Of a stretch of DNA of 64,000 nucleotides, positions 38,695 to 59,466 are shown piece by piece. The position numbers were made by a program, and so were the translations under genes. The notes below the pieces were generated by a model. It saw only the letters and a program-made list of their open reading frames with translations. It searched no databases and was not told the DNA's origin. The number at the start of each line of letters is the position of its first letter. Position 1 is the stretch's first letter. The stretch is taken from positions 124,001 to 188,000 of the IMG/VR virus record IMGVR_UViG_3300046703_000335. One strand, given 5' to 3'.

Positions 38695-40830
38695 ATGACA
38701 GCAGCACAAAAAGGTATTACTTTGCTTTTATGGTCTGAACAAGAAGATACACTACTCAAGGAGCTATATTTAAAAACACCTAAAGATATAATATTAACTA
38801 AGTTAAACAGAACTTGGAAATCTATAAGATATAGGGCTAGTAGACTAAAGTTTAAACGAGACCCATCCATTATAAAACAGGATAATATAGAAGGTACTAA
38901 AAAAGCTATGCTTGAAAAATATGGTGTAGAATACTCTACCCTTCTACCGGCTATGAAAGAAAAAAGTAGACAAACCAATTTGAAAAAAAGGGGAGTAGAG
39001 TATCCTTCACAATCCAAAGAAGTTCGTGACAAGATAAAATTAGTAGTAAATGAGAGATATGGTGTAGATAATGTATTTCAGGCACAGAAAATAAAAGAAA
39101 AATCTGAACAAACTATTTTAAAAAGATATGGAGTAAGATATATAAACCAAAGTCCAACTATTCGAGAGAAAACAAAAGAAACAAATCTTGAAAGATATGG
39201 AATATCAAATACTTTTCAATTAACAGATAGGGTCGAAAAAGGAATGATTGAAAAGTATGGACAAAGAGTCCCACTTAATGTCCCTGAAATTGCTGAAAAA
39301 AAGAAAAAAACGAGTTTAGAAAAATATGGTGTTGAAGTAGCTTCAAAAAATGAAGCTGTAAAAAGAAAATTATCAGAAACTTTAAAAACTGCTGTCGTTA
39401 GAGAAAAAAAATATCAAGCATTAAAGAAAAAAGGCTCTTTTAATTATTCTAATGAAGAGCTTGCATTCGCTAATTATTTATTAATAGCTGATCCAGACCT
39501 TAAAACTCATCAGCTTCATCCTATAACAAAACATGTGATAGATTACTATATGCCCAGATATGACTTATGGGTACAATATGACGGAACTTATTGGCACGGT
39601 AAGGGAGAAGCAGTGCATACTGGACCTCAAGCCATATCCATAGAGAAGATAAAAGCAAAAGATATCTATCAGAACGAAAATATTCCAAATTTAATAAGAT
39701 TCTGGTCAGATGATGTTAATGAAGCTATAAAAAAAGGCAGCATATTTACTCTTATTGAAATAAAAATAAAAGAAAAGATAAATACTACTGAGGATATATT
39801 TGTGTGCCACCAGTATCGAAAAAAAATAGAACATTATACTGAAGACCGAGACAATTTACCATTTAACCCAGATAATATCAAAGCATCAAATTTTACGCTT
39901 ATAAAGGAGGAACTATCAACAGAGATCGTAGAGTTTATAAAAAAATATGAATGGTTAGAAACTGTTGGAGTTAATCCTAAATGGTGTTTCACAGCTCGAT
40001 ACAATGATAAACTTGGAGGAGTAGTCCTAATAAATGAACCTACTGCTTATTCAAAAATGCTGGGTAAAGATACCCCCATCTATGAAGCCCTTATACAAAG
40101 AGGTGCTACAGCTTCCTGGACCCCTAAAAACCTCGGAAGCAGACTTGTTATGTTCTCTTGTAAGTGGATGGTAGCTAATACCCCAAAACGAATCTTTGTA
40201 GGTTATGCTGATCCTTCTGCTAAAGAACGCGGCATTATCTATCAAGCATGTAATTTTGATTATTTAGGGGATAATTTTGGGAATAGCTACCTATACAAGC
40301 ACCCTGAAATAAATCGAACATTTACATCCCAATATCTAAAAAGAACATCAACATTTAGACGCTGGTGTCTTCTTAATAAAATTGAACTGAGAAAAGAATG
40401 GTTTAAAGAAAATGGGTTTAAGAATTTGGAGATTATACCTCATGAAATTAAAAATATGTGGTATCTCTGGATAAAAGATATAATAAGCAGTGCAGAAAGA
40501 ATAACTATAAGTAAAAAGATGAAATATGCTATTCTACTCTATAGAGATAAAAAAGACAGAAAAATACTTGAACCTTTAAAAAAATATGACAAATTTCCAT
40601 ACAATAAAATTTATAACACAACAAACCAGCTAACTCTCCGACCACGCGGAAAAAACAATCATGGCTTAACAGCAGATAGAAAAAATCCAGAAAAAATTGA
40701 ATTTATATTAAAAAATCATAGCACTATGTCCAGGTCAGTTATGGCCCTAGAGTTGAATGAAACTCAACGATGGGTAAAAAGACAAGTAAATAAATTAGTA
40801 TCTGAGAATAAGATTAAGCCAAAGAGATAA
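38695..40830 (+). CDS. Multidomain protein: HTH + KYGV repeats + Vsr/DUF559-like endonuclease + Mom-like GNAT DNA-modification domain + HTH
   Basis: About seven (K/R)YGV-type repeats. DYYMPRYDLWVQYDGTYWHG nuclease motif. FIKKYEWL...RGA...KNLGSRL...VGYADPSAKERGIIYQACNFDYLG matches the Mom-family motif. On the opposite strand to its neighbours. Confidence 0.75.
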   Translation: MTAAQKGITLLLWSEQEDTLLKELYLKTPKDIILTKLNRTWKSIRYRASRLKFKRDPSIIKQDNIEGTKKAMLEKYGVEYSTLLPAMKEKSRQTNLKKRGVEYPSQSKEVRDKIKLVVNERYGVDNVFQAQKIKEKSEQTILKRYGVRYINQSPTIREKTKETNLERYGISNTFQLTDRVEKGMIEKYGQRVPLNVPEIAEKKKKTSLEKYGVEVASKNEAVKRKLSETLKTAVVREKKYQALKKKGSFNYSNEELAFANYLLIADPDLKTHQLHPITKHVIDYYMPRYDLWVQYDGTYWHGKGEAVHTGPQAISIEKIKAKDIYQNENIPNLIRFWSDDVNEAIKKGSIFTLIEIKIKEKINTTEDIFVCHQYRKKIEHYTEDRDNLPFNPDNIKASNFTLIKEELSTEIVEFIKKYEWLETVGVNPKWCFTARYNDKLGGVVLINEPTAYSKMLGKDTPIYEALIQRGATASWTPKNLGSRLVMFSCKWMVANTPKRIFVGYADPSAKERGIIYQACNFDYLGDNFGNSYLYKHPEINRTFTSQYLKRTSTFRRWCLLNKIELRKEWFKENGFKNLEIIPHEIKNMWYLWIKDIISSAERITISKKMKYAILLYRDKKDRKILEPLKKYDKFPYNKIYNTTNQLTLRPRGKNNHGLTADRKNPEKIEFILKNHSTMSRSVMALELNETQRWVKRQVNKLVSENKIKPKR

Positions 40831-40882
40831 GTACTTATCAAAAAGCATGTTAAGGATTATTTTTATATAATCCTCTTGGTCC

Positions 40883-41797
40883 TTAACTCCAACCCCCCCT
40901 TGCACCGGACACGAAGTTTCTACGGCTTTGGACCCCCGGACGTGAATACGGTCCCAGGGCCGAACTGATACCTATACCGTAACGAGGCTGTTTTAGTCCT
41001 ATAGCAATCTTTATAGATCTCTTAGCTTGGTCAAGAAGCTTATCGTATTCACCTTCAAAAGAATCTCTCATTGATTGATACTTAGATGATTTCTCTATAT
41101 TAAGAGATACACCACTGATGCTATAATCATATTCGTCAACTATCCAATTCAAAGCAAGAGCCCCGCAAGCCAGTGATGCGGACTTAAGAAGAATAACAGC
41201 TCTCCATCTATCTGGAGTTTGAAATAATGTTATACCTGTCACCGGAGGAGCCGTATTGAAATAATCAACAGCCATAAGTAGATACTCATAGAGTTCATAA
41301 TCTTCCCACACGTAACCAAATACCTGAGCTTGTGCTTGTATGAACTTTTCACTCGCCGGGGGACGAAATCTATAATTACGATCGGGATTATTATCCCTTA
41401 GCATAATTCTTAACCTTCTTACGAGCAACTGCTCAGAATCAACACTATTAATATCTGTCTTTACATCTTTAGCAACAACATTAAATTCCTGAACAACTTG
41501 AATTGTAGGAGATCCTGAAGTTTCCCTAAAATTCCATCGTACTAGCCAGTCTCCGATATTTGCATCTAAGGGTATGGTAATATTCACATAATATTGACCT
41601 ACCCCCATGGTAGCGGGGATTTGATCTGGAGGCCCAATAAGAACTTCAACACCTGTAGTATAATCAAATATAGAAAATCTAATATAATAGGGATCTACCA
41701 AATTTCCGATATTATCCCGGATTAATATTTTCAAATCTTCTTGGGTAAGAGTTTGTCCCGGTTGGTATGCTACTGACATATTAAATTCCTCGATCAA
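40883..41797 (-). CDS. Head-tail adaptor/neck protein with N-terminal Ig-like domain
   Basis: LVRRLRIMLRD...WEDYELYEYL..AVDYFN...EYDYSISGVSLNIEKS, a gp6/gp13-like adaptor pattern. Confidence 0.65.
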   Translation of the reverse strand: MIEEFNMSVAYQPGQTLTQEDLKILIRDNIGNLVDPYYIRFSIFDYTTGVEVLIGPPDQIPATMGVGQYYVNITIPLDANIGDWLVRWNFRETSGSPTIQVVQEFNVVAKDVKTDINSVDSEQLLVRRLRIMLRDNNPDRNYRFRPPASEKFIQAQAQVFGYVWEDYELYEYLLMAVDYFNTAPPVTGITLFQTPDRWRAVILLKSASLACGALALNWIVDEYDYSISGVSLNIEKSSKYQSMRDSFEGEYDKLLDQAKRSIKIAIGLKQPRYGIGISSALGPYSRPGVQSRRNFVSGARGGWS

Positions 41798-41987
41798 TAT
41801 TATTTAGATACTTGTCAAGAACTTTCCTTACAGAGTCTTCTTTAAGGAATGAAAACTTATGGAACTGTTCCTGAATATATGGAGTAATCTTACCTGACTC
41901 ATCTTTGAGAAACTCCCCATTTTCAGATCTTATATAGGATGATATTCGAATCATGTCCCTGAAGACAGGATTTTTTTTACGTTGCAT
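41781..41987 (-). CDS. Hypothetical protein (68 aa)
   Basis: GGGAG RBS and promoter motif upstream. Overlaps the next gene. Confidence 0.55.
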   Translation of the reverse strand: MQRKKNPVFRDMIRISSYIRSENGEFLKDESGKITPYIQEQFHKFSFLKEDSVRKVLDKYLNNIDRGI

Positions 41988-42024
41988 AAGATTGTCTCCC
42001 TATAATATTACTGTAAGGATTTTA

Positions 42025-42040
42025 TATTATTAGATTATTA
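42025..42040 (-). promoter_or_regulatory. Putative late promoter motif
   Basis: Minus strand TAATAATCTAATAATA. Confidence 0.55.
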
Positions 42041-42051
42041 GCTCTAAAATT

Positions 42052-42456
42052 TTAGTACAATATCATGAAAGCATTAATATCGAAGTGATTTTCCATAGCT
42101 GACATTTGCTGATGAATACCATCCGAAGTTACTGAAAATTCCACAGTGGTCAATTGTGTAGCAGAGGTCTCCAAAGCCCTATAATACCAGCGTATCTCAT
42201 AAGTCCCAATCTTCCATGTATCCTCAATAATAAAATTGGGTTTTATCTTTCCAGTATCTAAAATATCAGGTAACCGATTACGAATACCAATTGGCATAAA
42301 TTGATTTGTAAGAAGATGAACAAACCCAATATCATATCTTATCCAATATGGAGTATATGGAAAAGTCTGGTATGGGTAGGCATTATAATACCGCGCATAC
42401 AAATTAAGGATAAGATCTGTTTGTCCTATCCGATGTCCTTGTATAAAACTTTCCAT
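42052..42456 (-). CDS. Ig-like protein paralogous to the adaptor N-terminal domain
   Basis: PYWIRYDI...IGTYEIRWYYR versus PYYIRFSI...IGDWLVRWNFR in 40883..41797. Confidence 0.6.
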   Translation of the reverse strand: MESFIQGHRIGQTDLILNLYARYYNAYPYQTFPYTPYWIRYDIGFVHLLTNQFMPIGIRNRLPDILDTGKIKPNFIIEDTWKIGTYEIRWYYRALETSATQLTTVEFSVTSDGIHQQMSAMENHFDINAFMILY

Positions 42457-42520
42457 AAGGAGTCTCCAGACAAAGGAACCGATATATGCAAGATCAGTTC
42501 TTTAACGGAAGGGCACAATC

Positions 42521-42979
42521 TTATTCTTCGTTATCTTCTTCTTCGATCTCAAGTACTAACTCAACAGTAAACTTGATCACCTTCTTATCCTCATCAATAT
42601 CTGGCATATAATCAACCTGGTCTTCCCAGATATAATCATCAAAATCCTGATTCAAATCTGATATATCAAGATTAGCATATTTTTCTTTAAGAAAGGATGA
42701 TAGTTTTGGATTGATCATTTTTTTAAGATCACCATCATGATCATCAACCCAATCCTGAAGTATTCTATTAAGTACCCTATAACTGTCCGGTGGTATACCA
42801 TCATAAGTTATATGGATATCTGCCCATACTTCAATATTTGCTGAGAATTCCTCATCATTGTTTTCTACAACATTTTCTTCATCGATATCAATGTTTTCAA
42901 ACTCAATAAAAGAGGCTTCTTTTAGCTTAAAATTTTCAGAAGCTTTTTTAGCCATAAAATCAACAACAGATGCTCTCAT
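42521..42979 (-). CDS. Highly acidic protein, probable internal head protein
   Basis: About 28% D+E by manual count. N-terminal KKAS and KEAS sites. Confidence 0.55.
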   Translation of the reverse strand: MRASVVDFMAKKASENFKLKEASFIEFENIDIDEENVVENNDEEFSANIEVWADIHITYDGIPPDSYRVLNRILQDWVDDHDGDLKKMINPKLSSFLKEKYANLDISDLNQDFDDYIWEDQVDYMPDIDEDKKVIKFTVELVLEIEEEDNEE

Positions 42980-42981
42980 AA

Positions 42982-43182
42982 TTAAAATCCATGTTTGCTG
43001 TTAGTAAAATTAGCATCATTTATTCCCGTATAACCCATATCCCACATTACAGGCTCAAGTGTCCCCATACCTGTTATGCCACCGGTTTCAGGGGTCACTT
43101 TATCAATGTTATAAAATACATTGATTTCATATGGTCCTATAGCAGGGGATATAGTCATCATTTTACCTTGATATACATCCAT
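42982..43182 (-). CDS. Small TG-motif-rich protein
   Basis: 66 aa with ETG, GITG and GYTG. Tightly packed in the operon. Confidence 0.55.
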   Translation of the reverse strand: MDVYQGKMMTISPAIGPYEINVFYNIDKVTPETGGITGMGTLEPVMWDMGYTGINDANFTNSKHGF

Positions 43183-43190
43183 ATTAATTC

Positions 43191-44174: not shown

Positions 44175-47100
44175 TTATTTTATGCCAAATTCCTTAAGCC
44201 ATCCATCAGCTATTTTTCCCCAATTATACTCCTTCATCTTAGCATAAGCCCTATCAGCCCACATAAGCCTATAAGACTCATCAGAAAGCATCCTTATAGC
44301 TTCTGCTACGAATCTATTAACATATGAAGTGGGATATTCACCATTGCGACTTAATCCATCAGGAGAAAGAAGTATCCCTGCTGATCCTACAGTAGTTTGC
44401 AAACCGGCGAAGTCAGTACTTACAATAGAACACTTAGATAATCCTGCAGCAACTGCTGTTATACAAAATGTTTCACTGAACCAGCTCGGATACAACCAAA
44501 TCTTTGATTCTTTCTCATATTCAGCCAATTGCTTCTTACTCACTCGATCAACATACTTTACACCAGGCTGATTCATTAGATTTTTTATATCTGCTATAAA
44601 TTTCAGTCCCTCGACATCCTTCCGCATACGAGCCATGGATTCCCAATTAAAAAAGCCATAAGCTACGACAAGTTCAAAATCAGGGATCTCTTTTCTTATT
44701 TGAGGAACCATCTTTAAAAGCTGGTATAAACCTCTATCGGGGCTTGAAGAATAAACAGCTTGATTCTTCTTTTTATATTTGTCAACATCGCTATATAGAC
44801 TGAAATCCTGACCATTTGCAGTAAGGAACATCTTATCACTTATAATACCATGGTGACTCATAATAAATTCTTTATGCCACTCTGACAAATAAGCGTACTT
44901 ATCTACACGCCAAGTCATAATATCATAACTTTTATCTGGGGATAACCAAATATCATGAAATATGATATAGTTTCTTAAAGAATGAATATTTAATTTTAAT
45001 GGTTCCGTCGATCGTGACGCTATGAAATAATCAATAACATCATATTCTACATCAGCCTGCATCTTAGTATGATCACGATAAACAACATCCCCAACCTTTT
45101 CTCCGACATTATCAAAGACCGGATCAAGAACGATATCATCTTTACTGTCTGATAGTAAATCATTATAAATAGTGGTCTCAAAACCTTTTTTTACAAATTC
45201 CCGAGCAAGATATGATGCCCAAGTTTCTGATCCTGCCATACCCTCATCTACTTTTTGTTTATTCCAAGGCTCCCAAGCTGGACCTGTCCAAATTACTACT
45301 CGGGGTTTATTCCATTTTGCCCTATATTTCATATGATTTTCAGCATCTTCTTTATTATAAGATTCTCTATTCTCTTCCTGGTAGGCACCTCGGCTTATTC
45401 CGCCATAATGAAAAACAAAAGAATCTATAGCTTGACCTGTCACATATCCAAATTTTGATAATCGATTCATAAGGTCAAGATCTTCGCACCCATTAAGGAA
45501 GAGAGGATCAAATAAGCTTACTTCATTTATTGCACAGCGAGCAAAAATAGTAGCGTATGCTGCCACCCATCCCTGACGGACAAAAACATCCTTATGCTTT
45601 TTGTTAGAATACTCCATGAATTTATAGAGTTCTTCCACATAAGGTTTAATCTCATCAATTTTCATAGCTGGGTGAAGATCAATCTTTGATTTTTCTAAGA
45701 GCATCGAATAAGATGGTTTACCTGGAGCGTCATGCAACCAGCCTCTGTCACAATTAGACAATACCCCACAAGAAGCTAATCGATCAACAGTCTCCATTTT
45801 ATTTACAAGGCTAGTAAGCCAGCACTTTGACACTATAACATCTGAATTCAAAATTACAAAATATTTTGTATTAGAAGCTTTAATACCTGCGTTACAAGTC
45901 TCAGAAAAAGATAAGCGCTTATTTGGGTCACCTATAACAGTAATTCCTTTTAATGTCAGCAAGTAATCCCATGTCTCTTTATTACTACCTCCATCTGAGA
46001 TAATGATGTGGAAAGGGTATAGGGTATTCATGAGAATAGAGCTTACACACATCTTAAGATATTCAACGTTATTATAGTTAGCAATAATGATATCTACTAT
46101 GGATCTATTTTTTACATCTATCTTTTCGGGAGGATCCGGAAATTTCATCTGATTATTAATAAGCTCTGTTAAAGTGCTAATCCACTGACTAGCAATAACT
46201 GGTAGACTATACTCTCCTATAGAAGCTTTTCCAGCTTCTCCTATCTTCTTTCTCACGGTACTATCTTTCAACTTTATGAGAGCATTTTTCCACTCTTCTT
46301 TAGTATCACATATAAAACCGTTTTCTCCATCCTTGATAATTTCTTTGTATGCCTGAAGTGGAGAACAAAGAACTGGGAGACCAAGAGCCATTGCTACAGT
46401 AGCTTTCACAGAACTCTTTGCTGGTTGAACCTCAACACGTTGAGGGCACAATACCACATCACAGGCATTCATTACATCGACCCAGCCTTCCTCTGTCCAG
46501 CGATGAGTAGCATTATCCCATTCTGTACATAATACTATTTCATAACCTGCTTCTTCAATTGTATCTTTTAGATATTCATTTACAAGCCAGGAATTTCCAC
46601 CCATACCCACATAAACTGCCTTAGGCTTTAGATATCGATTTTCATATACTGCTTTATCAGATGTTTTCTCCACTGCATCCTTAAGGACTACTGTCTTCAT
46701 AAAACCATGTTCATTAGTAATCTCTTTAAGCTTGGTAGAACAGCAGGTGATAAGATCAACCTCTTCCATACATTCCCGTTCAAACGGAAAATTGAATAAA
46801 GCCTCACAATGATCAAAGACACATTTTATATCTGAGGATTTAAGATGCTTCATTATTTCAAGATCTTCTTTACCAAACTGAGTAAAAATAGCTACAGTTG
46901 CATCTCCTACCTTGTTTCTTGTTTCATAGATATTATTACCGTAGTAATTAGAAATGATTGTGCTATCAATACCCATATCTACCAGTTGCTGGCAGATATT
47001 AAACCTTCTTAATCGGATAGAAGGATTCGTTAGATCAAGTGTGGGAATAAACCACACTATTTTAATATCGCGAATTTTATTCAATCTTATGTCACAAAAA

Positions 47101-48296
47101 TCGAGGTTATTCCGGAGAACACTCATATTAAGATCATTTTTCTGCAAAAATTCTTTTAATTTAGAAATGTCTTCTTCCTGGAGCACCATTCCTTTTGACA
47201 AACGATTCATTTCGATATTCGTAATCTTAAGAAGTTCGCTCATCTGTTCATTACCGGGTTTATGCGTAAGAGCAAGTGTACAATATTTTACTACACTGTC
47301 ATATTCTTTTCTGTTGTAATAAATAAGAGCCAGTTTAGCTGCTGGAATAAATCCATAATAGTCAATTATCTGAGACATTCCTCCTTCAAGCTTTTTATTA
47401 AGAGCTTCTTTATAATATGATACTGCGGTGTCTGTATCATTCTCTTGCTCAAAGATATTTCCAAGAACCACGTAATTCTCAGCATAAATGCTATTGAATC
47501 TAATACCTTTTAGTGCATAATTTTTTGATGAGGAATAATCAGATTTTTCAAAATAGTATCTTGATAATTTTATACATGCTGTAGTAAGATTATCCGCAAA
47601 ATCAGCCCCCTTTTTTATATACGGATCAAGTACCGATATTGCTTTTTCCCACATTCCAAAATCAGCCAGTTCTTTACCATAATAAAATTTTATTCGCTCT
47701 GAACAATCTCCCGTTTCATATACTTTTTTGAGAGCCTCTATATTGCGAGCGGGATTATGTACTCTAACCCTATAATGATCAATATTGATATTTTCCCGAT
47801 GTAATCTATTGGGGGGGACATCCAAATTCATATACTCGTGTATGGGGTCATGCCATTTTATATGCTCACAATTTTTTACTATTCTTTCTCTAGGGAGAAT
47901 TAGTACTGGAGCATCCTTCTCATCATGGCTATATACGTAGTTAAGAATTATAATATCCCAAGCACTTATCTTTGGCTTCAATACCTGCAGTCTCATATAC
48001 TCTGAAGGCCTCAAAACATCGTCAGAGTCTAACCACATGATATATTGAGATGTATTATTACTAAAAGAGAAGTTTCTCGCAGCTGAGAAATCAGAAATCC
48101 ATTTAAAGAAAAATGTCTTAGCACCATAACTTTCAGCTAAAGACTTTATCTCTGGGTCCTCTTTTTCCATAGCAAGAGTTATTACTATCTCGTCAAATAG
48201 TTCACCTTGACAACTTTTAAGACATCTATCTAAAACATCCTTATCATCAGGACCTACAATAATATTCAAACCCAATAAAGGGGTGCGTATACTCAT
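44175..48296 (-). CDS. Multi-domain glycosyltransferase (GT2-TPR-GT4-GT2-GT4)
   Basis: GT2 #1: DFSAARNFSF, WLDSDD, PIHE. TPRs. GT-B #1: KSSVKATVAMALGLPVL. GT2 #2: DIIIANYN, ILNSDVIV, EDLDL. GT-B #2: YSSSPDRGL, YPSWFSETFCITA. Confidence 0.9.
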   Translation of the reverse strand: MSIRTPLLGLNIIVGPDDKDVLDRCLKSCQGELFDEIVITLAMEKEDPEIKSLAESYGAKTFFFKWISDFSAARNFSFSNNTSQYIMWLDSDDVLRPSEYMRLQVLKPKISAWDIIILNYVYSHDEKDAPVLILPRERIVKNCEHIKWHDPIHEYMNLDVPPNRLHRENINIDHYRVRVHNPARNIEALKKVYETGDCSERIKFYYGKELADFGMWEKAISVLDPYIKKGADFADNLTTACIKLSRYYFEKSDYSSSKNYALKGIRFNSIYAENYVVLGNIFEQENDTDTAVSYYKEALNKKLEGGMSQIIDYYGFIPAAKLALIYYNRKEYDSVVKYCTLALTHKPGNEQMSELLKITNIEMNRLSKGMVLQEEDISKLKEFLQKNDLNMSVLRNNLDFCDIRLNKIRDIKIVWFIPTLDLTNPSIRLRRFNICQQLVDMGIDSTIISNYYGNNIYETRNKVGDATVAIFTQFGKEDLEIMKHLKSSDIKCVFDHCEALFNFPFERECMEEVDLITCCSTKLKEITNEHGFMKTVVLKDAVEKTSDKAVYENRYLKPKAVYVGMGGNSWLVNEYLKDTIEEAGYEIVLCTEWDNATHRWTEEGWVDVMNACDVVLCPQRVEVQPAKSSVKATVAMALGLPVLCSPLQAYKEIIKDGENGFICDTKEEWKNALIKLKDSTVRKKIGEAGKASIGEYSLPVIASQWISTLTELINNQMKFPDPPEKIDVKNRSIVDIIIANYNNVEYLKMCVSSILMNTLYPFHIIISDGGSNKETWDYLLTLKGITVIGDPNKRLSFSETCNAGIKASNTKYFVILNSDVIVSKCWLTSLVNKMETVDRLASCGVLSNCDRGWLHDAPGKPSYSMLLEKSKIDLHPAMKIDEIKPYVEELYKFMEYSNKKHKDVFVRQGWVAAYATIFARCAINEVSLFDPLFLNGCEDLDLMNRLSKFGYVTGQAIDSFVFHYGGISRGAYQEENRESYNKEDAENHMKYRAKWNKPRVVIWTGPAWEPWNKQKVDEGMAGSETWASYLAREFVKKGFETTIYNDLLSDSKDDIVLDPVFDNVGEKVGDVVYRDHTKMQADVEYDVIDYFIASRSTEPLKLNIHSLRNYIIFHDIWLSPDKSYDIMTWRVDKYAYLSEWHKEFIMSHHGIISDKMFLTANGQDFSLYSDVDKYKKKNQAVYSSSPDRGLYQLLKMVPQIRKEIPDFELVVAYGFFNWESMARMRKDVEGLKFIADIKNLMNQPGVKYVDRVSKKQLAEYEKESKIWLYPSWFSETFCITAVAAGLSKCSIVSTDFAGLQTTVGSAGILLSPDGLSRNGEYPTSYVNRFVAEAIRMLSDESYRLMWADRAYAKMKEYNWGKIADGWLKEFGIK

Positions 48297-54580: not shown

Positions 54581-55296
54581 TATTTACCACCTTTAAGATA
54601 TTTCTTTAAAAGCTTATCAAAATACGCTATTTTATCCTTTGGTAAGTAGCTTTTAGCTCCTCCAAGATAATATGAAAAGCTATCCGCCCAATCCTCCCAA
54701 GGGGATCTTTTTGCATAGAATCTTGTGAATCTAGCATATGGTGAATAATAATAATCTCCTATTACTTCAGGAGTACCTTTTTCATTAATATGTATTCTTT
54801 TAAGTCCTGGTTTTGGATATTTTGACCAACCAGATAATTCCTGCCAATCTTTTTTAAGAGATAGATCCCCATCTTCTCCCTGTGCTTCATCCCACCCATG
54901 ACCAAGCTCATGATAAAGAGTTTGATCAAATTTATTTATTATAGACCCATTATCAGGATCTATAATTAACTTGGGGTCATTAAGCAATTGATCATTCATG
55001 ATAAGAGTATTATTAACATATTTACCATGATTCGGATAGTATTCCTTGGAGGGACCTAAGTCATCAAATGATAAAGATTTTATACCACACATCTTTACAA
55101 TTTCTGGAGATATTCTCTGAAGGCTACTATATAATGCCTGGATACACTCAGGATTAGTTTTTCTATCTACATTAATACCATAAATTTCTTTGATACCAGA
55201 AAACAAATCAGAGTTACGACTATGTTCTTCTAAATCAGCCGCAATTCTCCGTAGACGAAAAATAAGTTCTATTGGTGTACTTTTTATAGTCATCAT
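54580..55296 (-). CDS. Zincin-type metallopeptidase
   Basis: YHELGHGWD (HExxH) and downstream YA..SPWEDWADSF. Confidence 0.75.
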   Translation of the reverse strand: MMTIKSTPIELIFRLRRIAADLEEHSRNSDLFSGIKEIYGINVDRKTNPECIQALYSSLQRISPEIVKMCGIKSLSFDDLGPSKEYYPNHGKYVNNTLIMNDQLLNDPKLIIDPDNGSIINKFDQTLYHELGHGWDEAQGEDGDLSLKKDWQELSGWSKYPKPGLKRIHINEKGTPEVIGDYYYSPYARFTRFYAKRSPWEDWADSFSYYLGGAKSYLPKDKIAYFDKLLKKYLKGGK

Positions 55297-55310
55297 TACA
55301 CTAAAAAAAA

Positions 55311-55326
55311 TATTAATGTATTATTA
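55311..55326 (-). promoter_or_regulatory. Putative late promoter motif
   Basis: Minus strand TAATAATACATTAATA, just after a terminator. Confidence 0.5.
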
Positions 55327-55332
55327 TTTAAT

Positions 55333-55363
55333 AAAAAAGGTATTGGGCTACATACCCAATACC
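55333..55363 (-). terminator. Rho-independent terminator
   Basis: GGTATTGGG/CCCAATACC stem plus T6 on the minus strand. Confidence 0.75.
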
Positions 55364-55397
55364 CTTATTAATATCTTACTATTCCTAAAAAATGAAT

Positions 55398-56156
55398 TTA
55401 ACTATTATGTGGTAAATTAGATCTATCTGTTTTTACCATTGGAGCATTAGGGGTAAAAGGAATTTCACCTGATCGGACTAACTTATCACGAAGACTCACA
55501 CCACCATGCATAATATCCCCTTCTAATTTCTTCTTACCATCAGTATAAGTAATCAATCGAGCGGTATTACCAAATGCATCCTTTAGTTCTTCAACATTTT
55601 TTACAGTTTTATCAGCTTGTCCAGGTTTTCGAGAATTTTGTGCATCATCTACATTTACGCTATCCTGAAAACGAGACTTATGATGCTCAGCTTCTTGTTT
55701 ATGATAATTCTCCATAACTATCGCAAAACTTTTAGGATCCCCTTTTTCAAGTTGTCTCAAATCCTTAGCAGTATAAGTAACTGTGCCTCCCTGAGGAGCC
55801 TTAACTGTAATGGGGCTACCTTTTGCTTCTACCTGAGAAAGAAATGAAGAAGCAAGTACCATAGCTAACATAGCCAAGGATCTTATCTTAGGACTAACAC
55901 CCATAGCTTCCTTATCCCCTATACCCTCTGTAGAAGGCGTATTCAAGTATTTCGCAACAATCTCAGCAGCATTCTGGGGATTAAGCGTAATACCTACCTC
56001 ACGTGCCAATTGAACTGCTTCAGGGGGGAAAGTAGTCATGGCTTCCAAAGATTCAGAAATCTTATCAATTTCATAAGCTTCTTTTAAATACCCATGAGAC
56101 TCTACTGAATCAGCAATTTTATCAAGAGCTTTAGCTATCTTCAAAAATTCACACAT
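55398..56156 (-). CDS. Probable internal head protein with an internal signal-peptide-like segment
   Basis: LDKIADSVESHGYLKEAYEI N-terminus. KEA-MGVSPKIRSLAMLAMVLASSFLSQVEA at residues 82-111. Confidence 0.6.
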   Translation of the reverse strand: MCEFLKIAKALDKIADSVESHGYLKEAYEIDKISESLEAMTTFPPEAVQLAREVGITLNPQNAAEIVAKYLNTPSTEGIGDKEAMGVSPKIRSLAMLAMVLASSFLSQVEAKGSPITVKAPQGGTVTYTAKDLRQLEKGDPKSFAIVMENYHKQEAEHHKSRFQDSVNVDDAQNSRKPGQADKTVKNVEELKDAFGNTARLITYTDGKKKLEGDIMHGGVSLRDKLVRSGEIPFTPNAPMVKTDRSNLPHNS

Positions 56157-56215
56157 ACTATCTCCACCTTCTATAGTGATTCAATAAACATACACGTCAT
56201 ATCCCTTATACGCGA

Positions 56216-56231
56216 TATTAATAGACTATTA
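56216..56231 (-). promoter_or_regulatory. Putative late promoter motif
   Basis: Minus strand TAATAGTCTATTAATA. Confidence 0.55.
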
Positions 56232-56248
56232 ATTTTTTAATAACCTTG

Positions 56249-56277
56249 TTGTTATGCTCATTCTAAACCAGTATATT
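56249..56277 (+). promoter_or_regulatory. Sigma70-type promoter
   Basis: TTGTTA-17 nt-TATATT upstream of an AAGGAG RBS and ATG 56307. Confidence 0.5.
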
Positions 56278-56306
56278 ATTAATAGACACACTAACAAGGA
56301 GACTTT

Positions 56307-56813
56307 ATGTTGAATAAGAAACTAATAATCATGTTGACCGTAATTTTAATGTCAGTAATTAATATCTCTGCAAAAAATATCCTCAGCATCTATGATAGTC
56401 ATAAAAAGCTATATACCAGCAAGTCACTGAACCCTGCTTATATTGGACCTCTATTTGCCACTGGGGGAGCCATGACAGACATTAACCGGTATATCAACAA
56501 TATGGCACCAGAGAAGATTGGGCATTTCACCAGTAATACTTTAGTTCTTATTGAAACAGACACCCTCCTAAATCAGGTGTATACATTTAATAAAGTGACA
56601 GCCTATAATGTGACAAAAGATACCAATAGCTTTAATATAATGCACATAGTTGGTACTCTGGGGGGAGAAAAGTATGATATAATTGTAGAAATAAAAGAGG
56701 GACCAGAGTATGATCGGATCATCACGATCTATAAGAATCTTAAACCTATAACAATAATTTTGTGGTTAGATAATTCAAAAATTACTCAGAAGAAAGCTCC
56801 TACTACTATCTAA
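56307..56813 (+). CDS. Exported protein (moron-like)
   Basis: Signal peptide MLNKKLIIMLTVILMSVINISA. Opposite strand, with its own promoter and terminator. Confidence 0.7.
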   Translation: MLNKKLIIMLTVILMSVINISAKNILSIYDSHKKLYTSKSLNPAYIGPLFATGGAMTDINRYINNMAPEKIGHFTSNTLVLIETDTLLNQVYTFNKVTAYNVTKDTNSFNIMHIVGTLGGEKYDIIVEIKEGPEYDRIITIYKNLKPITIILWLDNSKITQKKAPTTI

Positions 56814-56827
56814 CATCATATAGCAGT

Positions 56828-56869
56828 AAAGGCTCCTGGTACAAAACAACCTGTACCAGGAGCCTTTTT
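56828..56869. terminator. Bidirectional terminator between convergent genes
   Basis: 16-bp perfect stem AAAGGCTCCTGGTACA/TGTACCAGGAGCCTTT. Confidence 0.85.
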
Positions 56870-56883
56870 AATACACTATCCGT

Positions 56884-59466
56884 TTACATAAACTCTTTTA
56901 AGAATCTTCCATGATCAGCAGCAATAGGAGCTACTTTGAAAAGTTCTTCTTTTAGCGAAGCATATTTCTTACCAGCATTAAACAATCGCTTCATCTTAAG
57001 AGTATAATTATTTCCTCGAATCTTCCCATACTCATAGAAGGACAGAGCTTTATTCTGTGCGAGGCATTCTTTAAAATACTCTGACACTATTATAGTAGGA
57101 GTCTCAGCCTGATATTGTGGTATCATCCCACAGGCTTCTATAAACTTATTCCAACTACCATAATAGTGCTCAATAACATGTGAGGGTGCCCCCAAAATTG
57201 ATTTTTCACGATAGGTCTCTCGAGACATCCCTAATTTTAAGCTAACTTCTTTAAACTTATTCTGGATTGTATTCTCGTCAAAAGATACCGAAAAAGCTCT
57301 TTTATTTACTTCATGTGGAGCATCAGTGCACTTTATAATATTATCATAACTGTTTTTTAAGTTAACCCAGTTAATCGAGTCCTTAACATGTCTGGAAAAC
57401 AACAAGATAACTTCATAACTGTCTGAGGTAGTCACATGCTTAAAAGGTATTCTCAACACTTTAAATAACTTATACCCTAAATTACTACATGTGTTTATTG
57501 ATCTTTCAATAAGGGGAACTTTTTGGTTGGGGCTATAACAGACACCGAATACTCCATCCTCCCTCAAGGATTTAATACAACCTTTTACAGTAGCATCCCA
57601 ATACTGAGTCAACCAATCGGAAAGTTCTGGAAATCTATTGATACTTTGAGATTCTTCATTAGAATAGCTTTCATAATCAAAGTATGGTGGTGATGAAAAT
57701 GCTAATCCAAAATAATTCGTGTAAGGGATATCAACTTCAGAGCCCTTATTGTGTACACAATAATTTCCCCCTAAGTTAGCTTTTACAAATGCTCCGAAAT
57801 TTAATAGATTTTCATATGTTATAGTATTAGGCTCAAAACCTACATACTCCATACCTAAAGACATTGCTGCCAGCATCCTTGAACCAAAACCAGCAGAATA
57901 ATCTAATACCTTACCATTTTTACAAAAGTTGGCATATATATACCTAGCTATTGAGGGCTTAAAGTTACTTACAACAGTATTCATTAACTTTAGCCCTTTA
58001 CGCATTGAAGAATCATTTATTCTATCTGCGTACCTCAACCTATTCTCTACTAACTTTTTAAAAAAAGTCTCATCAACCCATACATCTATAGGTGCTGGAT
58101 AACCTTTACGTTTACTGCTATATATATTCGGAAAAAACTTCTCGCATAATTCCATCCCAGAGGTGTTAAAGCTTAAGAGATCGCCATCACATGTTGAAAT
58201 CCCGTTGTCTTTAAAGCTCCTTAACAAATAAAGAGCCCTACTGTCTGATATGTCTGAAAATGGAAAAGGTTTCCCCCAATATTGCTCAAAAGTCATATTA
58301 AACATCCGGGCCTTCATAACATCATTACCTACCCTATAAAATTTAGGATGTACCATTAATGGGGTTAAGGTATTAACCTTATCGGGGATTAAGAACTCTT
58401 CAGGTATCTTATATAGGACATCCGGAGTGGCTACTTGATATACAATATCAAAAAATTCCTTATAAAATTTTTTAGAAAAACTTATCCCACTTTTATAAAG
58501 CTGAAAACCCCACCCCAACTTATTCTCTAAAAAATCAACAAAAGCACTTAGTTGTTCCTTTATAGGGCAATAATTATTAATTATAAGAAATCGAGAATCA
58601 TCATCGTAATAACCATCATCTATAAACCAATAGGCCAATATTCTTTCATCCCAGTACTCTGAAATTAAGTCTATTGGAATTAGCTTACCTTCAACACCCT
58701 CTTTATAAAAAGATTCTCTAAACTTTGAGAAATGTTCACTCTGAATTGTTGCAAAACGTAACCCTGTTCCGTTATCACAGGGGTAGCAATTAGTGGAATA
58801 AGGTTCTAAAAGTTTATGTTTTAAACGAAGGTACTGCTCTTGTTTTAATGAGTGACTCTCATAATATCTTGGAGAAGAATCTATTCCACCATCCCCAAGT
58901 AGACCACCAATAATTAAGACAATCTGATTATGTGTTAAAGGAGGAGACTGCTTCTGTGTTTTTAATAAAATCCCTTTATCTTGTATTATAGGTCTCCAAG
59001 TAGTTTTTGAAACACCATATTTAGAAGAAAATTCTTCTTGTGTTAATTCATAATAATCTTTTTCAAGAACTTCTTTTGGAGTCTGTATGACTCTTTCTTT
59101 TTGTATATCATTAACTTTTATAGATATCCCAAGATTCAATTTCTTCCTTCTATATGCTACACCCTCTCCAGACATCTTAAAAAGTTTGCCAATATTTGAA
59201 TCTGTTTTTCCTTCAGCGTGCAAGGTTCTCAAGATATCATCAGTGAGTTTATTCTTAAGATCTTTTCGTATACCCTCATACACCACAGTAATTTTCGAGT
59301 TATATGCCCCTCTACTATCCGAAGTAATACCATAGGTTTTCATTCGCTTAAAGATTGCATCTTCTGAGACACCAAAAATTCCACCTATAGCTTTTGCAGT
59401 AAAACCAAAATCGCAATATAGCCTTTTTATGGATTCCATATTTAATTCTTCGATAGTATACTGCAT
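56884..59466 (-). CDS. HTH repeats + LAGLIDADG endonuclease + amino-DNA methyltransferase (N4C/N6A) fusion
   Basis: LAGLIDADG motifs IIGGLLGDGG and LAYWFIDDG. MTase motifs VLDYSAGFGSRM and FSSPPYF. C-terminal YYGSWNKFIEACG (homing-endonuclease-associated repeat). Confidence 0.85.
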   Translation of the reverse strand: MQYTIEELNMESIKRLYCDFGFTAKAIGGIFGVSEDAIFKRMKTYGITSDSRGAYNSKITVVYEGIRKDLKNKLTDDILRTLHAEGKTDSNIGKLFKMSGEGVAYRRKKLNLGISIKVNDIQKERVIQTPKEVLEKDYYELTQEEFSSKYGVSKTTWRPIIQDKGILLKTQKQSPPLTHNQIVLIIGGLLGDGGIDSSPRYYESHSLKQEQYLRLKHKLLEPYSTNCYPCDNGTGLRFATIQSEHFSKFRESFYKEGVEGKLIPIDLISEYWDERILAYWFIDDGYYDDDSRFLIINNYCPIKEQLSAFVDFLENKLGWGFQLYKSGISFSKKFYKEFFDIVYQVATPDVLYKIPEEFLIPDKVNTLTPLMVHPKFYRVGNDVMKARMFNMTFEQYWGKPFPFSDISDSRALYLLRSFKDNGISTCDGDLLSFNTSGMELCEKFFPNIYSSKRKGYPAPIDVWVDETFFKKLVENRLRYADRINDSSMRKGLKLMNTVVSNFKPSIARYIYANFCKNGKVLDYSAGFGSRMLAAMSLGMEYVGFEPNTITYENLLNFGAFVKANLGGNYCVHNKGSEVDIPYTNYFGLAFSSPPYFDYESYSNEESQSINRFPELSDWLTQYWDATVKGCIKSLREDGVFGVCYSPNQKVPLIERSINTCSNLGYKLFKVLRIPFKHVTTSDSYEVILLFSRHVKDSINWVNLKNSYDNIIKCTDAPHEVNKRAFSVSFDENTIQNKFKEVSLKLGMSRETYREKSILGAPSHVIEHYYGSWNKFIEACGMIPQYQAETPTIIVSEYFKECLAQNKALSFYEYGKIRGNNYTLKMKRLFNAGKKYASLKEELFKVAPIAADHGRFLKEFM

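What the first reader, a model, noticed from the sequence alone, without database searches (positions are those of the whole stretch)
38695..59466. Recurrent theme: two unrelated nuclease-DNA-modifier single-chain fusions
Seen: Vsr-like nuclease + Mom-like GNAT (38695..40830) and LAGLIDADG + amino-MTase (56884..59466). Both have HTH repeats and both sit as insertions in the structural region. Inference: a convergent class of mobile 'homing restriction-modification' genes that mark the resident genome and cut unmarked co-infecting phages.
Basis: inference. Interest (0 to 1): 0.68.

Follow-up and report, generated by a model that had tools for sequence, protein, structure and literature searches.

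The report
Mobile nuclease–DNA-modifier fusion genes, huge phage
Two genes in the structural region of a huge phage each join a homing-type DNA-cutting domain to a DNA-marking enzyme in one protein. Both are mobile cassettes that come and go between near-identical phages, and whether the mark protects against the cut is plausible but untested.

Summary
ORF A (38695..40830 +, 711 aa) has Myb-like and DUF7487 DNA-binding repeats, a Vsr-like (EDxHD) nuclease and a Mom-type GNAT. ORF B (56884..59466 -, 860 aa) has three HTH repeats, an I-SceI-like double-motif LAGLIDADG nuclease and an SPPY amino-methyltransferase.

AlphaFold models (pLDDT 91 and 94) match Vsr (Z 12.2), Mu Mom (Z 16.0) and I-WcaI (Z 20.1). 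Neither fusion is an assembly artefact. Each architecture recurs in about 80-100 independent metagenomic protein clusters, with catalytic residues almost always kept.

Both genes are intergenic cassettes in the tail/capsid module of a ~460-kb phage. Close relatives show empty sites, 28-64%-identical replacements between 94-100%-identical flanks, and an ORF-B-type gene at ORF A's site.

The theme is wider than two. The same Mom subfamily is also fused to LAGLIDADG and endonuclease VII/HNH nucleases, and LAGLIDADG is also fused to ParB_N.

The idea that the mark protects against the cut is not tested here. Iyer et al. 2021 already described Mom fused to restriction-fold nucleases in jumbo phages with the same reading. 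I found no prior report of the LAGLIDADG-methyltransferase family, the shared insertion sites or the combinatorial pattern.

The parts
38575..40870 (+). Cassette A: inserted segment holding ORF A with its own upstream region, lying in what is a 58-bp spacer in the empty allele
   Evidence: Alignment of both window junctions with the empty site of relative G005 (L014: g304 ends at 7879, g100 starts at 7938). Boundaries are good to about +/-20 nt. A promoter-like TTGAAA-17-TATTAT lies at 38634-38662 (this is a consensus match only).
38695..40830 (+). ORF A, 711 aa: Vsr-like homing-type nuclease fused to a Mom-type DNA modifier. It is transcribed against all its neighbours.
38722..39414 (+). ORF A aa 10-240: Myb/SANT-like helix bundle and about seven DUF7487 repeats (KYGV..N..Q type), the presumed DNA-binding array
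   Evidence: Pfam DUF7487 1e-32 and PHROG 3339/12131 'homing endonuclease'. Relatives carry Pfam Myb_DNA-binding. The same repeats occur in F-LimVIII-type homing endonucleases of Dickeya phages.
39439..39789 (+). ORF A aa 249-365: Vsr-like (EDxHD-type) nuclease domain; E255, D283, D296, H301, D323
   Evidence: VIA-align match to 1cw0 Vsr: Z 12.2, rmsd 2.5 A, 113 aa. The five positions are kept in 95 of 97 family members. They map onto I-Bth0305I E170/D196/N208/H213/D222 as described in PMC3239194.
39802..40608 (+). ORF A aa 370-638: Mom-type GNAT module; R469, S482, D506, Y516 correspond to Mu Mom R111, S124, D149, Y159
   Evidence: Match to 8bv8 at Z 16.0, Foldseek E 2e-9, phmmer alignment. 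The four residues are invariant in 120 of 120. Residue roles are from PMC13219725.
40657..40827 (+). ORF A aa 655-711: C-terminal helix-turn-helix extension, absent from many relatives
   Evidence: PHROG 323. It is 51% identical to the N-terminal HTH of the LAGLIDADG-methyltransferase ORF that occupies the same site in L015. It is absent in L004-L006.
56850..59640 (-). Cassette B: inserted segment between the major capsid gene's stop codon and the 3' end of the convergent 168-aa gene
   Evidence: The empty site in G005 (L026) is a 75-bp spacer with one hairpin. The window has hairpins on both sides of ORF B. Boundaries are approximate.
56884..59466 (-). ORF B, 860 aa: LAGLIDADG homing-type nuclease fused to an amino-methyltransferase
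58957..59442 (-). ORF B aa 9-170: three HTH-like repeats
   Evidence: PHROG 8446, 7545, 9759 and 323 hits on these residues. Pfam HTH_23 is only weak. The repeat pattern is visible in the translation.
58399..58938 (-). ORF B aa 177-356: I-SceI/I-WcaI-like double-motif LAGLIDADG domain (LLGDGG at aa 189-194, FIDDG at aa 281-285)
   Evidence: Pfam LAGLIDADG_2 3e-15. PDB phmmer hits to 6x1j and I-SceI. VIA-align Z 20.1, rmsd 2.1 A. The acidic residues of both motifs are kept in at least 78 of 86 relatives.
57397..58164 (-). ORF B aa 435-690: class I SAM-dependent amino-methyltransferase; motif I around D522/G526/G528, motif IV S592-P-P-Y595
   Evidence: Fold matches to Trm11, TrmN, METTL5 and PrmC at Z 14-18. 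Stand-alone phage homologues are annotated as N4-cytosine or DNA methyltransferase. The motifs are kept in 76 of 86.
56887..57369 (-). ORF B aa 700-860: C-terminal extension with a weak match to the 'homing endonuclease associated repeat'; present in about half of the family
   Evidence: Pfam HNH_repeat E 0.034. Alignment occupancy is 0.53.
59651..61660 (-). Major capsid gene directly upstream of ORF B: exon 1 at 61563..61660, group I intron at 60441..61562 (1122 nt, with a frame-broken LAGLIDADG ORF), exon 2 at 59651..60440
   Evidence: PHROG 2522 major head protein 3e-37. Rfam Intron_gpI 29 bits, E 8e-5, below the gathering score. Alignment with the intronless alleles of G001 and G005 fixes the splice sites: the exon ends in T and the intron ends in G. 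The joined exons were not translated.

Best explanation
ORF A and ORF B are two unrelated free-standing, homing-endonuclease-type mobile genes of an uncultured huge phage (~460 kb). Each encodes, in one chain, a modular DNA-binding array, a site-specific nuclease and a DNA base-modifying enzyme.

- ORF A carries an EDxHD/Vsr-like nuclease and a Mom-type enzyme. In phage Mu, Mom uses Gly-tRNA to put a carbamoylmethyl group on adenine N6.
- ORF B carries a double-motif LAGLIDADG nuclease and an SPPY amino-methyltransferase.

Shown here:
- Both are intact, and both halves are conserved as if active.
- Both are intergenic cassettes that are gained, lost and replaced between nearly identical phages.
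- Nuclease and modifier travel together as a unit.

Inferred:
- The pair works like a single-chain restriction-modification or homing unit.
- The modifier marks the resident genome. This protects it from the fused nuclease and probably also from host restriction.
- The nuclease cuts unmarked DNA of related co-infecting phages at or near the empty site.
- Repair then copies the cassette into the competitor, or the competitor is disabled.
For: Architecture and folds.

Catalytic residues kept:
- E-D-D-H-D in 95 of 97 Vsr-containing relatives.
- Mom R/S/D/Y in 120 of 120.
- GDG..DDG in 73 of 86.
- Motif I/IV in 76 of 86.

Recurrence: on contigs of up to 589 kb.

Mobility:
- Empty site for A in G005 (58-bp spacer) and in G004, while more distant relatives carry it.
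- Empty site for B in G005 and G004.
- G001 has a 28%-identical family member at the same site although its capsid protein is 100% identical.
- Window against L004: flanks and the first ~600 nt of ORF A are 94-100% identical, but the nuclease-plus-Mom part is only ~60% identical. The two enzymatic domains were therefore exchanged together.
- The last ~130 nt of the capsid gene next to cassette B are 78-80% identical to G001, against 97-98% upstream. All these changes are synonymous, as expected for a co-conversion tract or target immunity.

Modularity:
- The same Mom subfamily (44-56% identity) is fused to LAGLIDADG and to endonuclease VII/HNH nucleases.
- LAGLIDADG is fused to ParB_N next to a PAPS-reductase gene at cassette B's site in G002.
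- An ORF-B-type gene sits at cassette A's site in L015.

Precedent:
- Iyer et al. 2021 proposed the same role for Mom fused to restriction-fold nucleases.
- A homing endonuclease acts in phage-phage competition in PhiPA3 (PMC11620839).
Against: - No experiment or read-level data bear on activity, targets, or whether modification blocks cleavage.
- Homing endonucleases normally avoid self-cleavage through an interrupted or diverged target, so a modifier is not required.
- Nuclease-only relatives (F-LimVIII type) and modifier-only relatives (Vibrio phage 501E54-1; P0083) are viable. The two halves therefore do not strictly depend on each other.
- The methyltransferase's nearest solved folds are RNA and protein amino-methyltransferases, not DNA methyltransferases. 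Its Pfam DNA-methylase score is below the cut-off.
- Mu Mom residue R151 has no clear equivalent in ORF A in the alignment.
- The relatives were selected by homology, which favours intact copies.
Confidence: 0.5

Rival explanations
1. Homing gene with a payload. The nuclease only drives the spread of the cassette, by classical free-standing homing with self-immunity through target divergence. The modifier is an anti-host-restriction benefit that keeps the selfish gene from being lost. There is no functional link between the mark and the fused nuclease.
For: - Mom and orphan phage methyltransferases are known anti-restriction functions (PMC7261163, PMC13219725).
- The synonymous-change cluster at the capsid gene's 3' end is what target-site immunity without modification would look like.
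- Nuclease-only and modifier-only relatives exist.
- The Mom tetrad is kept in 120 of 120, as expected for a selected payload.
Against: - It does not explain why fusion in one chain, rather than a neighbouring gene, recurs with at least three nuclease folds and several modifiers.
- It does not explain why nuclease and modifier are swapped together.
- It does not explain why nuclease sites almost never decay, since 95 of 97 are intact. Purely selfish homing genes often degenerate; the frame-broken LAGLIDADG ORF in the capsid intron of this same window looks like an example.
Confidence: 0.3
2. Anti-host or general exclusion enzyme, not a homing element. This is the other half of the reading of Iyer et al. 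2021. The modifier protects phage DNA globally and the nuclease degrades host or any superinfecting DNA at frequent short sites, like a Type IIG/IIC enzyme. Patchy distribution would then reflect ordinary accessory-gene turnover.
For: - Published proposal for Mom fused to restriction-fold nucleases in jumbo phages.
- The nuclease is maintained under purifying selection.
- Mu Mom acts on a short degenerate motif (own knowledge).
Against: - The nuclease halves belong to homing lineages with long targets: LAGLIDADG_2 of the I-SceI/I-WcaI type, and EDxHD with modular repeats.
- The cassettes sit precisely in intergenic spacers, with allele replacement at the same site by distant family members. 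This is a site-specific behaviour.
- LAGLIDADG is not among the nuclease folds of known restriction enzymes (own knowledge).
Confidence: 0.12
3. The nuclease domains are inactive and serve only to bind DNA, steering the modifier to particular sites (a domesticated homing endonuclease).
For: Inactive LAGLIDADG domains used as binding modules (maturases, regulators) are known (own knowledge). The DNA-binding arrays are large.
Against: The metal-binding acidic residues of both LAGLIDADG motifs and all five EDxHD positions are kept in nearly all members over 40-80% sequence divergence.
Confidence: 0.06
4. Assembly or gene-calling artefact: two neighbouring genes wrongly read as one.
For: None found.
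Against: - The frames are continuous.
- The same fusions occur in about 100 and about 80 independent clusters from different sources.
- The two-domain models are confident, with pTM 0.82 and 0.84.
Confidence: 0.01

Closest known systems
Mom fused to restriction-fold endoDNase proteins of jumbo phages (Iyer, Anantharaman, Krishnan, Burroughs, Aravind 2021, Viruses 13:63, section 3.4.7)
   Same: A Mom-family GNAT fused to a restriction-endonuclease-fold nuclease in large phages. The authors read it as momylation protecting phage DNA while the nuclease attacks host or superinfecting phage DNA. They also note several copies per genome (PA5oct has five momylating enzymes).
   Different: That paper does not use the words 'homing', 'Vsr' or 'LAGLIDADG'.

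New here:
- The nuclease is placed in the Vsr-like/EDxHD homing lineage with DUF7487 repeats.
- The gene is shown to be an intergenic cassette with empty and replaced alleles.
- The same Mom module is shown on LAGLIDADG and endonuclease VII/HNH nucleases.
EDxHD (Vsr-like) homing endonucleases: I-Bth0305I and the phage Hef type (Taylor et al. 2011, PMC3239194)
   Same: An N-terminal modular DNA-binding repeat region followed by a C-terminal Vsr-like catalytic domain with the E, D, x, H, D positions. The family occurs in phages and includes free-standing members.
   Different: - ORF A carries a whole extra enzyme (Mom) plus an HTH behind the nuclease.
- The helix between H301 and D323 has Vsr-like length (22 residues, against 9 in I-Bth0305I).
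- The sequence profile of the domain finds no PDB chain, so the link rests on the predicted fold and motif spacing.
Phage Mu Mom (PDB 8bv8; PMC13219725, PMC7261163)
   Same: GNAT fold with Mom-specific elements (Z 16.0). Residues equivalent to R111, S124, D149 and Y159 are conserved. The Pfam Mom score is above the cut-off.
   Different: Only 14-16% identity. An extra conserved N-terminal helix region (aa 370-410). No clear equivalent of R151 in the alignment. Fused to a nuclease. Substrate and product are unknown.
I-SceI / I-WcaI family LAGLIDADG homing endonucleases (Pfam LAGLIDADG_2)
   Same: Monomeric double-motif fold (Z 20.1, 25% identity to I-WcaI), with both catalytic acidic residues present.
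   Different: - Free-standing rather than intron-encoded.
- Preceded by three HTH repeats and followed by a methyltransferase.
- I found no report of a LAGLIDADG-methyltransferase protein in the searchable literature, which is a limited library.
Single-chain restriction-modification enzymes (Type IIG/IIC/IIB, e.g. MmeI, BsaXI)
   Same: A nuclease and an amino-methyltransferase in one polypeptide. The proposed logic is to mark self and cut unmarked DNA.
   Different: - Known single-chain enzymes use PD-(D/E)xK-type nucleases and one shared target-recognition domain for short sites (own knowledge).
- Here the nucleases are homing-type with their own long-site binding surfaces, and one modifier is not a methyltransferase at all.
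- These genes are phage cassettes at fixed intergenic sites.
Free-standing homing endonuclease genes of T4-like phages and cyanophages (seg, mob, Hef, F-CphI) and the PhiPA3 intron endonuclease used in phage-phage competition (PMC6083498, PMC11620839)
   Same: Intergenic insertion beside a conserved gene, patchy distribution among close relatives, divergence of flanking sequence next to the insert, and a role in competition between co-infecting phages.
   Different: Those enzymes carry no DNA-modifying domain. Their self-immunity comes from target differences or intron interruption.

Membership tests
EDxHD / Vsr-like homing endonucleases | Vsr-like catalytic fold | tested here: met
   The model of ORF A aa 249-365 matches 1cw0_A at Z 12.2, rmsd 2.5 A, 113 aa. 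The model has pLDDT 90.8.
EDxHD / Vsr-like homing endonucleases | Conserved E, D, x, H, D positions (I-Bth0305I E170, D196, N208, H213, D222) | tested here: met
   E255, D283, D296, H301 and D323 have matching spacing. The full set is present in 95 of 97 relatives. The mapping was made by motif spacing and the Vsr fold match, not by a direct alignment to I-Bth0305I.
EDxHD / Vsr-like homing endonucleases | N-terminal modular DNA-binding repeats before the nuclease | tested here: met
   DUF7487 repeats at aa 66-240. Whether they equal NUMOD2 was not tested.
EDxHD / Vsr-like homing endonucleases | Site-specific double-strand cleavage that drives homing | not testable with these tools
   Only indirect evidence: empty, occupied and replaced alleles.
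Mom family (PF25680) | Pfam score above the gathering cut-off | tested here: met
   33.0 bits against 27.1. The genome search gave 35.4 bits.
Mom family (PF25680) | GNAT fold closest to Mu Mom | tested here: met
   8bv8_B at Z 16.0 is the top hit, 3 Z-units above other GNATs. Foldseek E 2e-9.
Mom family (PF25680) | Catalytic residues R111, S124, D149, R151, Y159 of Mu Mom | tested here: inconclusive
   R469, S482, D506 and Y516 align and are invariant in 120 of 120. R151 aligns to S508 in the phmmer alignment, and a nearby K510 or R512 may substitute.
Mom family (PF25680) | tRNA-dependent N6-carbamoylmethylation of adenine in DNA | not testable with these tools
   Needs expression and nucleoside LC-MS.
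LAGLIDADG_2 (I-SceI-like) homing endonucleases | Two LAGLIDADG motifs with catalytic acidic residues in one chain, and the matching fold | tested here: met
   Pfam 57 bits against a cut-off of 25. D192 and D283/D284 are kept. 6x1j at Z 20.1.
DNA amino-methyltransferases (N6_N4_Mtase, PF01555) | Pfam score above the gathering cut-off | tested here: not met
   19.9 bits against 26.7, and only the motif I region matches. Family members P0019 and P0025, and the L015 and G001 proteins, do reach the cut-off.
DNA amino-methyltransferases (N6_N4_Mtase, PF01555) | SAM-binding motif I and catalytic (D/N/S)PP(Y/F) motif IV on a class I fold | tested here: met
   D522, G526, G528 and S592-P-P-Y595 are kept in 76 of 86. 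Fold matches at Z 14-18.
DNA amino-methyltransferases (N6_N4_Mtase, PF01555) | The substrate is DNA (N4-cytosine or N6-adenine) | not testable with these tools
   The nearest solved folds act on RNA or protein. Phage homologues are only annotated as DNA methylases.
Single-chain restriction-modification enzymes (Type IIG/IIC) | Nuclease and modifier in one chain | tested here: met
Single-chain restriction-modification enzymes (Type IIG/IIC) | Modification of the recognition site blocks cleavage by the same enzyme | not testable with these tools
   This is the decisive experiment and has not been done.
Free-standing homing endonuclease genes | Intergenic insert with empty sites in close relatives and sequence change in the flank next to the insert | tested here: met
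   Cassette A. Cassette B.

The most novel reading that the evidence does not exclude
Huge phages carry a combinatorial class of 'self-immunising homing endonucleases'. Homing nucleases of at least three folds (EDxHD/Vsr-like, LAGLIDADG, endonuclease VII/HNH) are fused to exchangeable DNA-marking enzymes (Mom, amino-methyltransferase, ParB_N with PAPS reductase). These compete for the same few intergenic sites in the structural module. In each one the fused modifier chemically masks the nuclease's own long target in the resident genome. That would be a route to self-immunity not known for homing endonucleases, and the first restriction-modification-like use of a LAGLIDADG nuclease and of tRNA-dependent momylation.
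Probability: 0.3. Interest if true: 0.8.

Novelty: new variant of a known kind. Interest (0 to 1): 0.62.

Why it matters
If the mark really shields against the fused nuclease, homing endonucleases and restriction-modification systems, usually treated as separate kinds of selfish element, would be joined by a natural intermediate. That intermediate would have arisen several times.

This would explain how huge phages tolerate many active nucleases in essential regions. It would also point to phage-against-phage warfare as a driver of DNA hypermodification.

In practice the families offer long-site nucleases paired with site-directed base modifiers (methylation, momylation) in compact single chains. 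There are dozens of natural specificity variants and ready-made 'empty-site' substrates to test.

Even under the more modest payload reading, the data show that anti-restriction genes spread between huge phages by homing.

Tried and rejected
- Megablast of both loci against 50,697 phage records: no match. The phage has no close sequenced relative. The nearest by tail sheath are LR745208.1 (33%) and Tunturiibacter phage Tunturi_5.
- Pattern-based search of viral contigs with whole ORF B: nothing. The family was then found by the word-based protein search and by searching the records of relatives.
- Sequence profile of the nuclease domain against PDB sequences: only noise. The Vsr link needed the predicted structure.
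- Foldseek on the two-domain model A listed only GNATs. The all-against-representatives aligner was needed to see Vsr.
- Rfam at gathering thresholds: no hit in the window. The capsid intron appears only at E 8e-5 and was confirmed by comparison with intronless alleles.
- NCBIfam: no family for either protein.
- An early note that G001's 911-aa protein has a different methyltransferase class was wrong. It is a colinear 28%-identical homologue of ORF B with the same motif order.
- 'Collaborative homing' (ORF B targeting the capsid intron site): considered, not supported. G001 has an ORF-B-type gene without the intron, and only the window has both.
- Neighbours as a DNA-modification cluster (radical SAM, giant glycosyltransferase): no evidence of a link.
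- One fetch from genomes failed and was repeated.
- PMC2995806 (Iyer 2009) is not held.
- The large representative-protein search, the protein atlas and the complex predictor were not used, because the claim does not rest on absence of relatives or on a protein-protein contact.
Full report
WHAT IS THERE

The window is bases 124001-188000 of a 210-kb IMG/VR virus record that CheckV rates 45% complete. That implies a phage of about 460 kb. A 98%-complete relative, G004, is 467 kb.

The window is a structural module on the minus strand:
- baseplate and tail genes at 9739..14216;
- tail sheath at 23599..26532;
- a scaffold-like acidic protein at 62440..63447;
- the major capsid gene.

The nearest deposited phages by tail sheath are only 31-33% identical. 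They are LR745208.1 (485 kb, uncultured) and Tunturiibacter phage Tunturi_5. The standard genetic code gives long frames throughout.

ORF A (38695..40830, plus strand, 711 aa)

ORF A runs against all its neighbours, and the AT skew flips over it. Its parts are:
- A Myb-like N-terminus and about seven DUF7487 repeats (Pfam 1e-32). The same repeats occur in annotated homing endonucleases such as F-LimVIII of Dickeya phages.
- A nuclease domain at aa 249-365.
- A Mom-type GNAT at aa 370-638 (Pfam 33 bits against a cut-off of 27.1).
- A C-terminal HTH.

An AlphaFold model of aa 235-650, built on 72 relatives, has pLDDT 90.8 and pTM 0.82. It matches Mu Mom (8bv8) at Z 16.0, rmsd 3.1 A, over 176 residues. 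It matches E. coli Vsr bound to DNA (1cw0) at Z 12.2, rmsd 2.5 A, over 113 residues.

The nuclease carries the five positions that define the EDxHD (Vsr-like) homing endonuclease family of I-Bth0305I and the phage Hef proteins (PMC3239194). These are E255, D283, D296, H301 and D323.

Mu Mom's R111, S124, D149 and Y159 are described as active-site or activity-critical residues in PMC13219725. They align with R469, S482, D506 and Y516 of ORF A. R151 has no clear partner.

ORF B (56884..59466, minus strand, 860 aa)

ORF B has:
- three HTH-like repeats (aa 9-170);
- a LAGLIDADG_2 domain (aa 177-356; 57 bits against a cut-off of 25);
- a helical linker;
- a methyltransferase (aa 435-690) with motif I at aa 520-531 followed by SPPY at aa 592-595;
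- a C-terminal extension that weakly resembles the 'homing endonuclease associated repeat'.

The model of aa 170-700 has pLDDT 93.6. It matches I-WcaI (6x1j) at Z 20.1, rmsd 2.1 A, over 185 residues. It also matches amino-methyltransferases of the (D/N/S)PP(Y/F) type (Trm11, TrmN, METTL5, PrmC) at Z 14-18.

The Pfam DNA-methylase score is below its cut-off (19.9 against 26.7). The closest solved folds act on RNA or protein, so 'amino-methyltransferase' is shown but 'DNA' is inferred. That inference rests on the fusion itself and on stand-alone phage homologues annotated as DNA methylases.

NOT ARTEFACTS: TWO LARGE FAMILIES

A word-based search with ORF A aa 230-650 found 266 proteins.
- Of the best 120, 97 carry the Vsr-like domain, scored with my own HMM.
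- They are 50-83% identical and 700-1000 aa long.
- They lie on contigs of up to 589 kb from several data sources.

The search with ORF B aa 170-700 found 86 proteins.
- About 70 cover at least 97% of the LAGLIDADG-plus-methyltransferase span at 40-76% identity.
- They lie on contigs of up to 474 kb.

Several contig lengths appear in both lists (22455, 51160, 53143, 99012). This suggests that the two genes travel in the same phage lineage.

Catalytic positions are kept almost everywhere:
- E-D-D-H-D in 95 of 97;
- the Mom R-S-D-Y tetrad in 120 of 120;
- GDG..DDG in 73 of 86;
- motif I plus SPP(Y/F/W) in 76 of 86.

This speaks against dead, purely DNA-binding nuclease domains. By contrast, the LAGLIDADG ORF in the capsid intron of the same window is split between two reading frames. 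The caveat is that homology searches favour intact copies.

BOTH ARE MOBILE CASSETTES

Cassette A. The genes flanking ORF A (100 aa at 38251..38553; 304 aa at 40883..41797) were traced in six relatives.
- Three relatives carry an ORF A homologue at the same place and in the same orientation (50-64% identity).
- G005 has flanks 80-86% identical, yet the two flanking genes are separated by only 58 bp.
- G004 also lacks ORF A.
- The insert spans about 38575..40870. It brings its own upstream region with a promoter-like site (a weak consensus match only).
- Against the closest relative (L004), nucleotide identity is 94-100% in the flanks and 99-100% over the first ~600 nt of ORF A (the DNA-binding repeats).
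- Identity then drops to about 60%, with indels, from ~39300 to the end of the gene. The nuclease-plus-Mom part has therefore been exchanged as one block.

Cassette B. ORF B lies between the capsid gene's stop codon and the 3' end of a convergent 168-aa gene.
- In G005 (capsid 99% identical) the site is a 75-bp spacer with one hairpin. G004 also lacks the gene.
- G001 has a capsid C-terminal half that is 100% identical in protein. At this same site it carries a 911-aa colinear family member only 28% identical to ORF B.
- G002 carries there a 586-aa LAGLIDADG_2 + ParB_N protein, followed by a PAPS-reductase/DUF3440 gene. I read this pair as resembling IbrA/IbrB-type predicted DNA-modification modules, from my own knowledge.
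- The last ~130 nt of the capsid gene are only 78-80% identical between the window and G001, against 97-98% upstream. The encoded protein is nevertheless identical.
- Such a block of purely synonymous change beside the insert is what co-conversion from a different donor, or selection for a cleavage-resistant target, would leave.

THE THEME IS COMBINATORIAL

- The Mom module of ORF A (aa 370-638) is 52% identical to that of P0186. The N-terminal half of P0186 is a LAGLIDADG_2 nuclease with HTH repeats. Nine such clusters are among the best 120 hits.
- Other close Mom relatives (44-48% identical) carry endonuclease VII-type or HNH-type nucleases (PHROG 1035, 559). Endonuclease VII is the fold of the free-standing cyanophage homing enzyme F-CphI (PMC6083498).
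- In L015, a high-GC relative, the site of cassette A holds a 776-aa HTH + LAGLIDADG + SPPY-methyltransferase gene. It is a distant homologue of ORF B (23% over 512 aa, E 4e-21).
- Its N-terminal HTH is 51% identical to ORF A's C-terminal HTH.
- So unrelated nuclease-modifier fusions replace each other at the same intergenic sites and share accessory DNA-binding modules.

HOW IT PROBABLY WORKS

Shown:
- Two intact multi-domain genes.
- Conserved active sites in all four enzymatic domains.
- Cassette behaviour.
- Joint exchange of nuclease and modifier.

Inferred, with about 0.5 confidence for the whole chain:
- The modifier marks the resident genome and the nuclease cuts unmarked alleles of related co-infecting phages.
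- The result is gene conversion (homing) or exclusion of the competitor.

Three points favour real coupling over coincidence:
- Fusion has arisen with several nuclease folds and several modifiers.
- The two halves move together.
- The nuclease sites do not decay.

Points against certainty:
- Homing enzymes do not need a modifier for self-immunity.
- The synonymous block in the capsid gene could by itself be the immunity.
- Nuclease-only and modifier-only relatives exist.
- The methyltransferase's substrate is unproven.

The main rival (about 0.3) is a homing gene carrying an anti-host-restriction payload. A general anti-host restriction-modification enzyme (about 0.12) fits poorly with long-site homing folds and site-specific allele replacement.

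WHAT IS KNOWN ALREADY

Iyer et al. [quoted passage not shown] They propose that momylation protects phage DNA while the nuclease attacks host or superinfecting phage DNA.

That paper does not mention homing, Vsr or LAGLIDADG. The 2026 biochemical paper on Mom does not discuss fused nucleases either.

Searches for LAGLIDADG-methyltransferase fusions found nothing relevant. The library is limited to open-access papers.

PhiPA3's intron endonuclease shows that homing enzymes can serve phage-phage competition (PMC11620839).

I therefore rate the finding as a new variant of known kinds (free-standing homing genes; single-chain restriction-modification enzymes). The new parts are:
- the LAGLIDADG-methyltransferase family;
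- the placement of the Mom-fused nuclease in the EDxHD homing lineage;
- the empty, replaced and mosaic alleles;
- the combinatorial exchange at shared sites.

LIMITS

- Insertion boundaries are good to about 20 nt.
- The EDxHD mapping rests on a predicted fold and motif spacing.

Noticed in passing
window 60441..61562 (-), within the capsid gene 59651..61660: The major capsid gene is split after codon 33 by a 1122-nt group I intron. The Rfam match is only 29 bits. The exon ends in T and the intron ends in G. The intron's LAGLIDADG ORF is broken into two frames (61103..61549 and 60529..61029) and is 27-28% identical to ORF B's N-terminal half. G001 and G005 have uninterrupted capsid genes by direct alignment. 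G002 and G004 show a single ~300-aa open frame there.
   Followed up: yes
window 59651..59780 (3' end of capsid exon 2) compared with L024: A block of about 27 purely synonymous differences lies in the last ~130 nt of the capsid gene, next to cassette B. The rest of the exon is 97-98% identical and the protein is 100% identical.
   Followed up: partly
window 28686..30044 (-): A third free-standing homing-type gene lies in the structural module. It encodes 452 aa with strong PHROG matches to HNH and homing endonucleases with repeats (1.6e-96), and sits a little upstream of the tail sheath gene. It has no modifier domain.
   Followed up: no
L015:8361-10691 (+): A high-GC relative has an HTH + LAGLIDADG + SPPY-methyltransferase gene at exactly the site of cassette A, in the opposite orientation. 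Its N-terminal HTH is 51% identical to ORF A's C-terminal HTH.
   Followed up: partly
L025:5187-8854 (-): At cassette B's site another relative (G002) has a LAGLIDADG_2 + ParB_N fusion (586 aa), a 299-aa unknown gene and a PAPS-reductase/DUF3440 gene. This may be another nuclease joined to a predicted DNA-modification module.
   Followed up: partly
P0194, P0197, P0199, P0201, P0203-P0206, P0196 (metagenomic proteins): The Mom subfamily of ORF A is also fused to endonuclease VII-type and HNH-type nucleases (PHROG 1035, 559). At least three nuclease folds therefore carry the same modifier.
   Followed up: partly
window 44175..48296 (-) and 37127..37651 (-): A 1373-aa protein with three or four glycosyltransferase domains and a small radical-SAM protein (QueE-like by PHROG) sit between tail and capsid genes. 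Their role is unknown and no link to the fusions was found.
   Followed up: no
window 62440..63447 (-): A scaffold-like 335-aa protein has tandem acidic repeats (KDASADKDEDDKDKEE-type units). The repeat region varies in length in relatives (69% identity over 390 columns in G001).
   Followed up: no
window 1..9111 (-): An open frame of more than 3037 aa runs off the window's start, upstream of the baseplate genes. It was not analysed.
   Followed up: no
G000:C1:72782-73183 (outside the window): A weak second DUF7487-repeat match lies in a 380-aa open frame elsewhere in the same genome. It may be another repeat-bearing homing-type gene without Mom.
   Followed up: no
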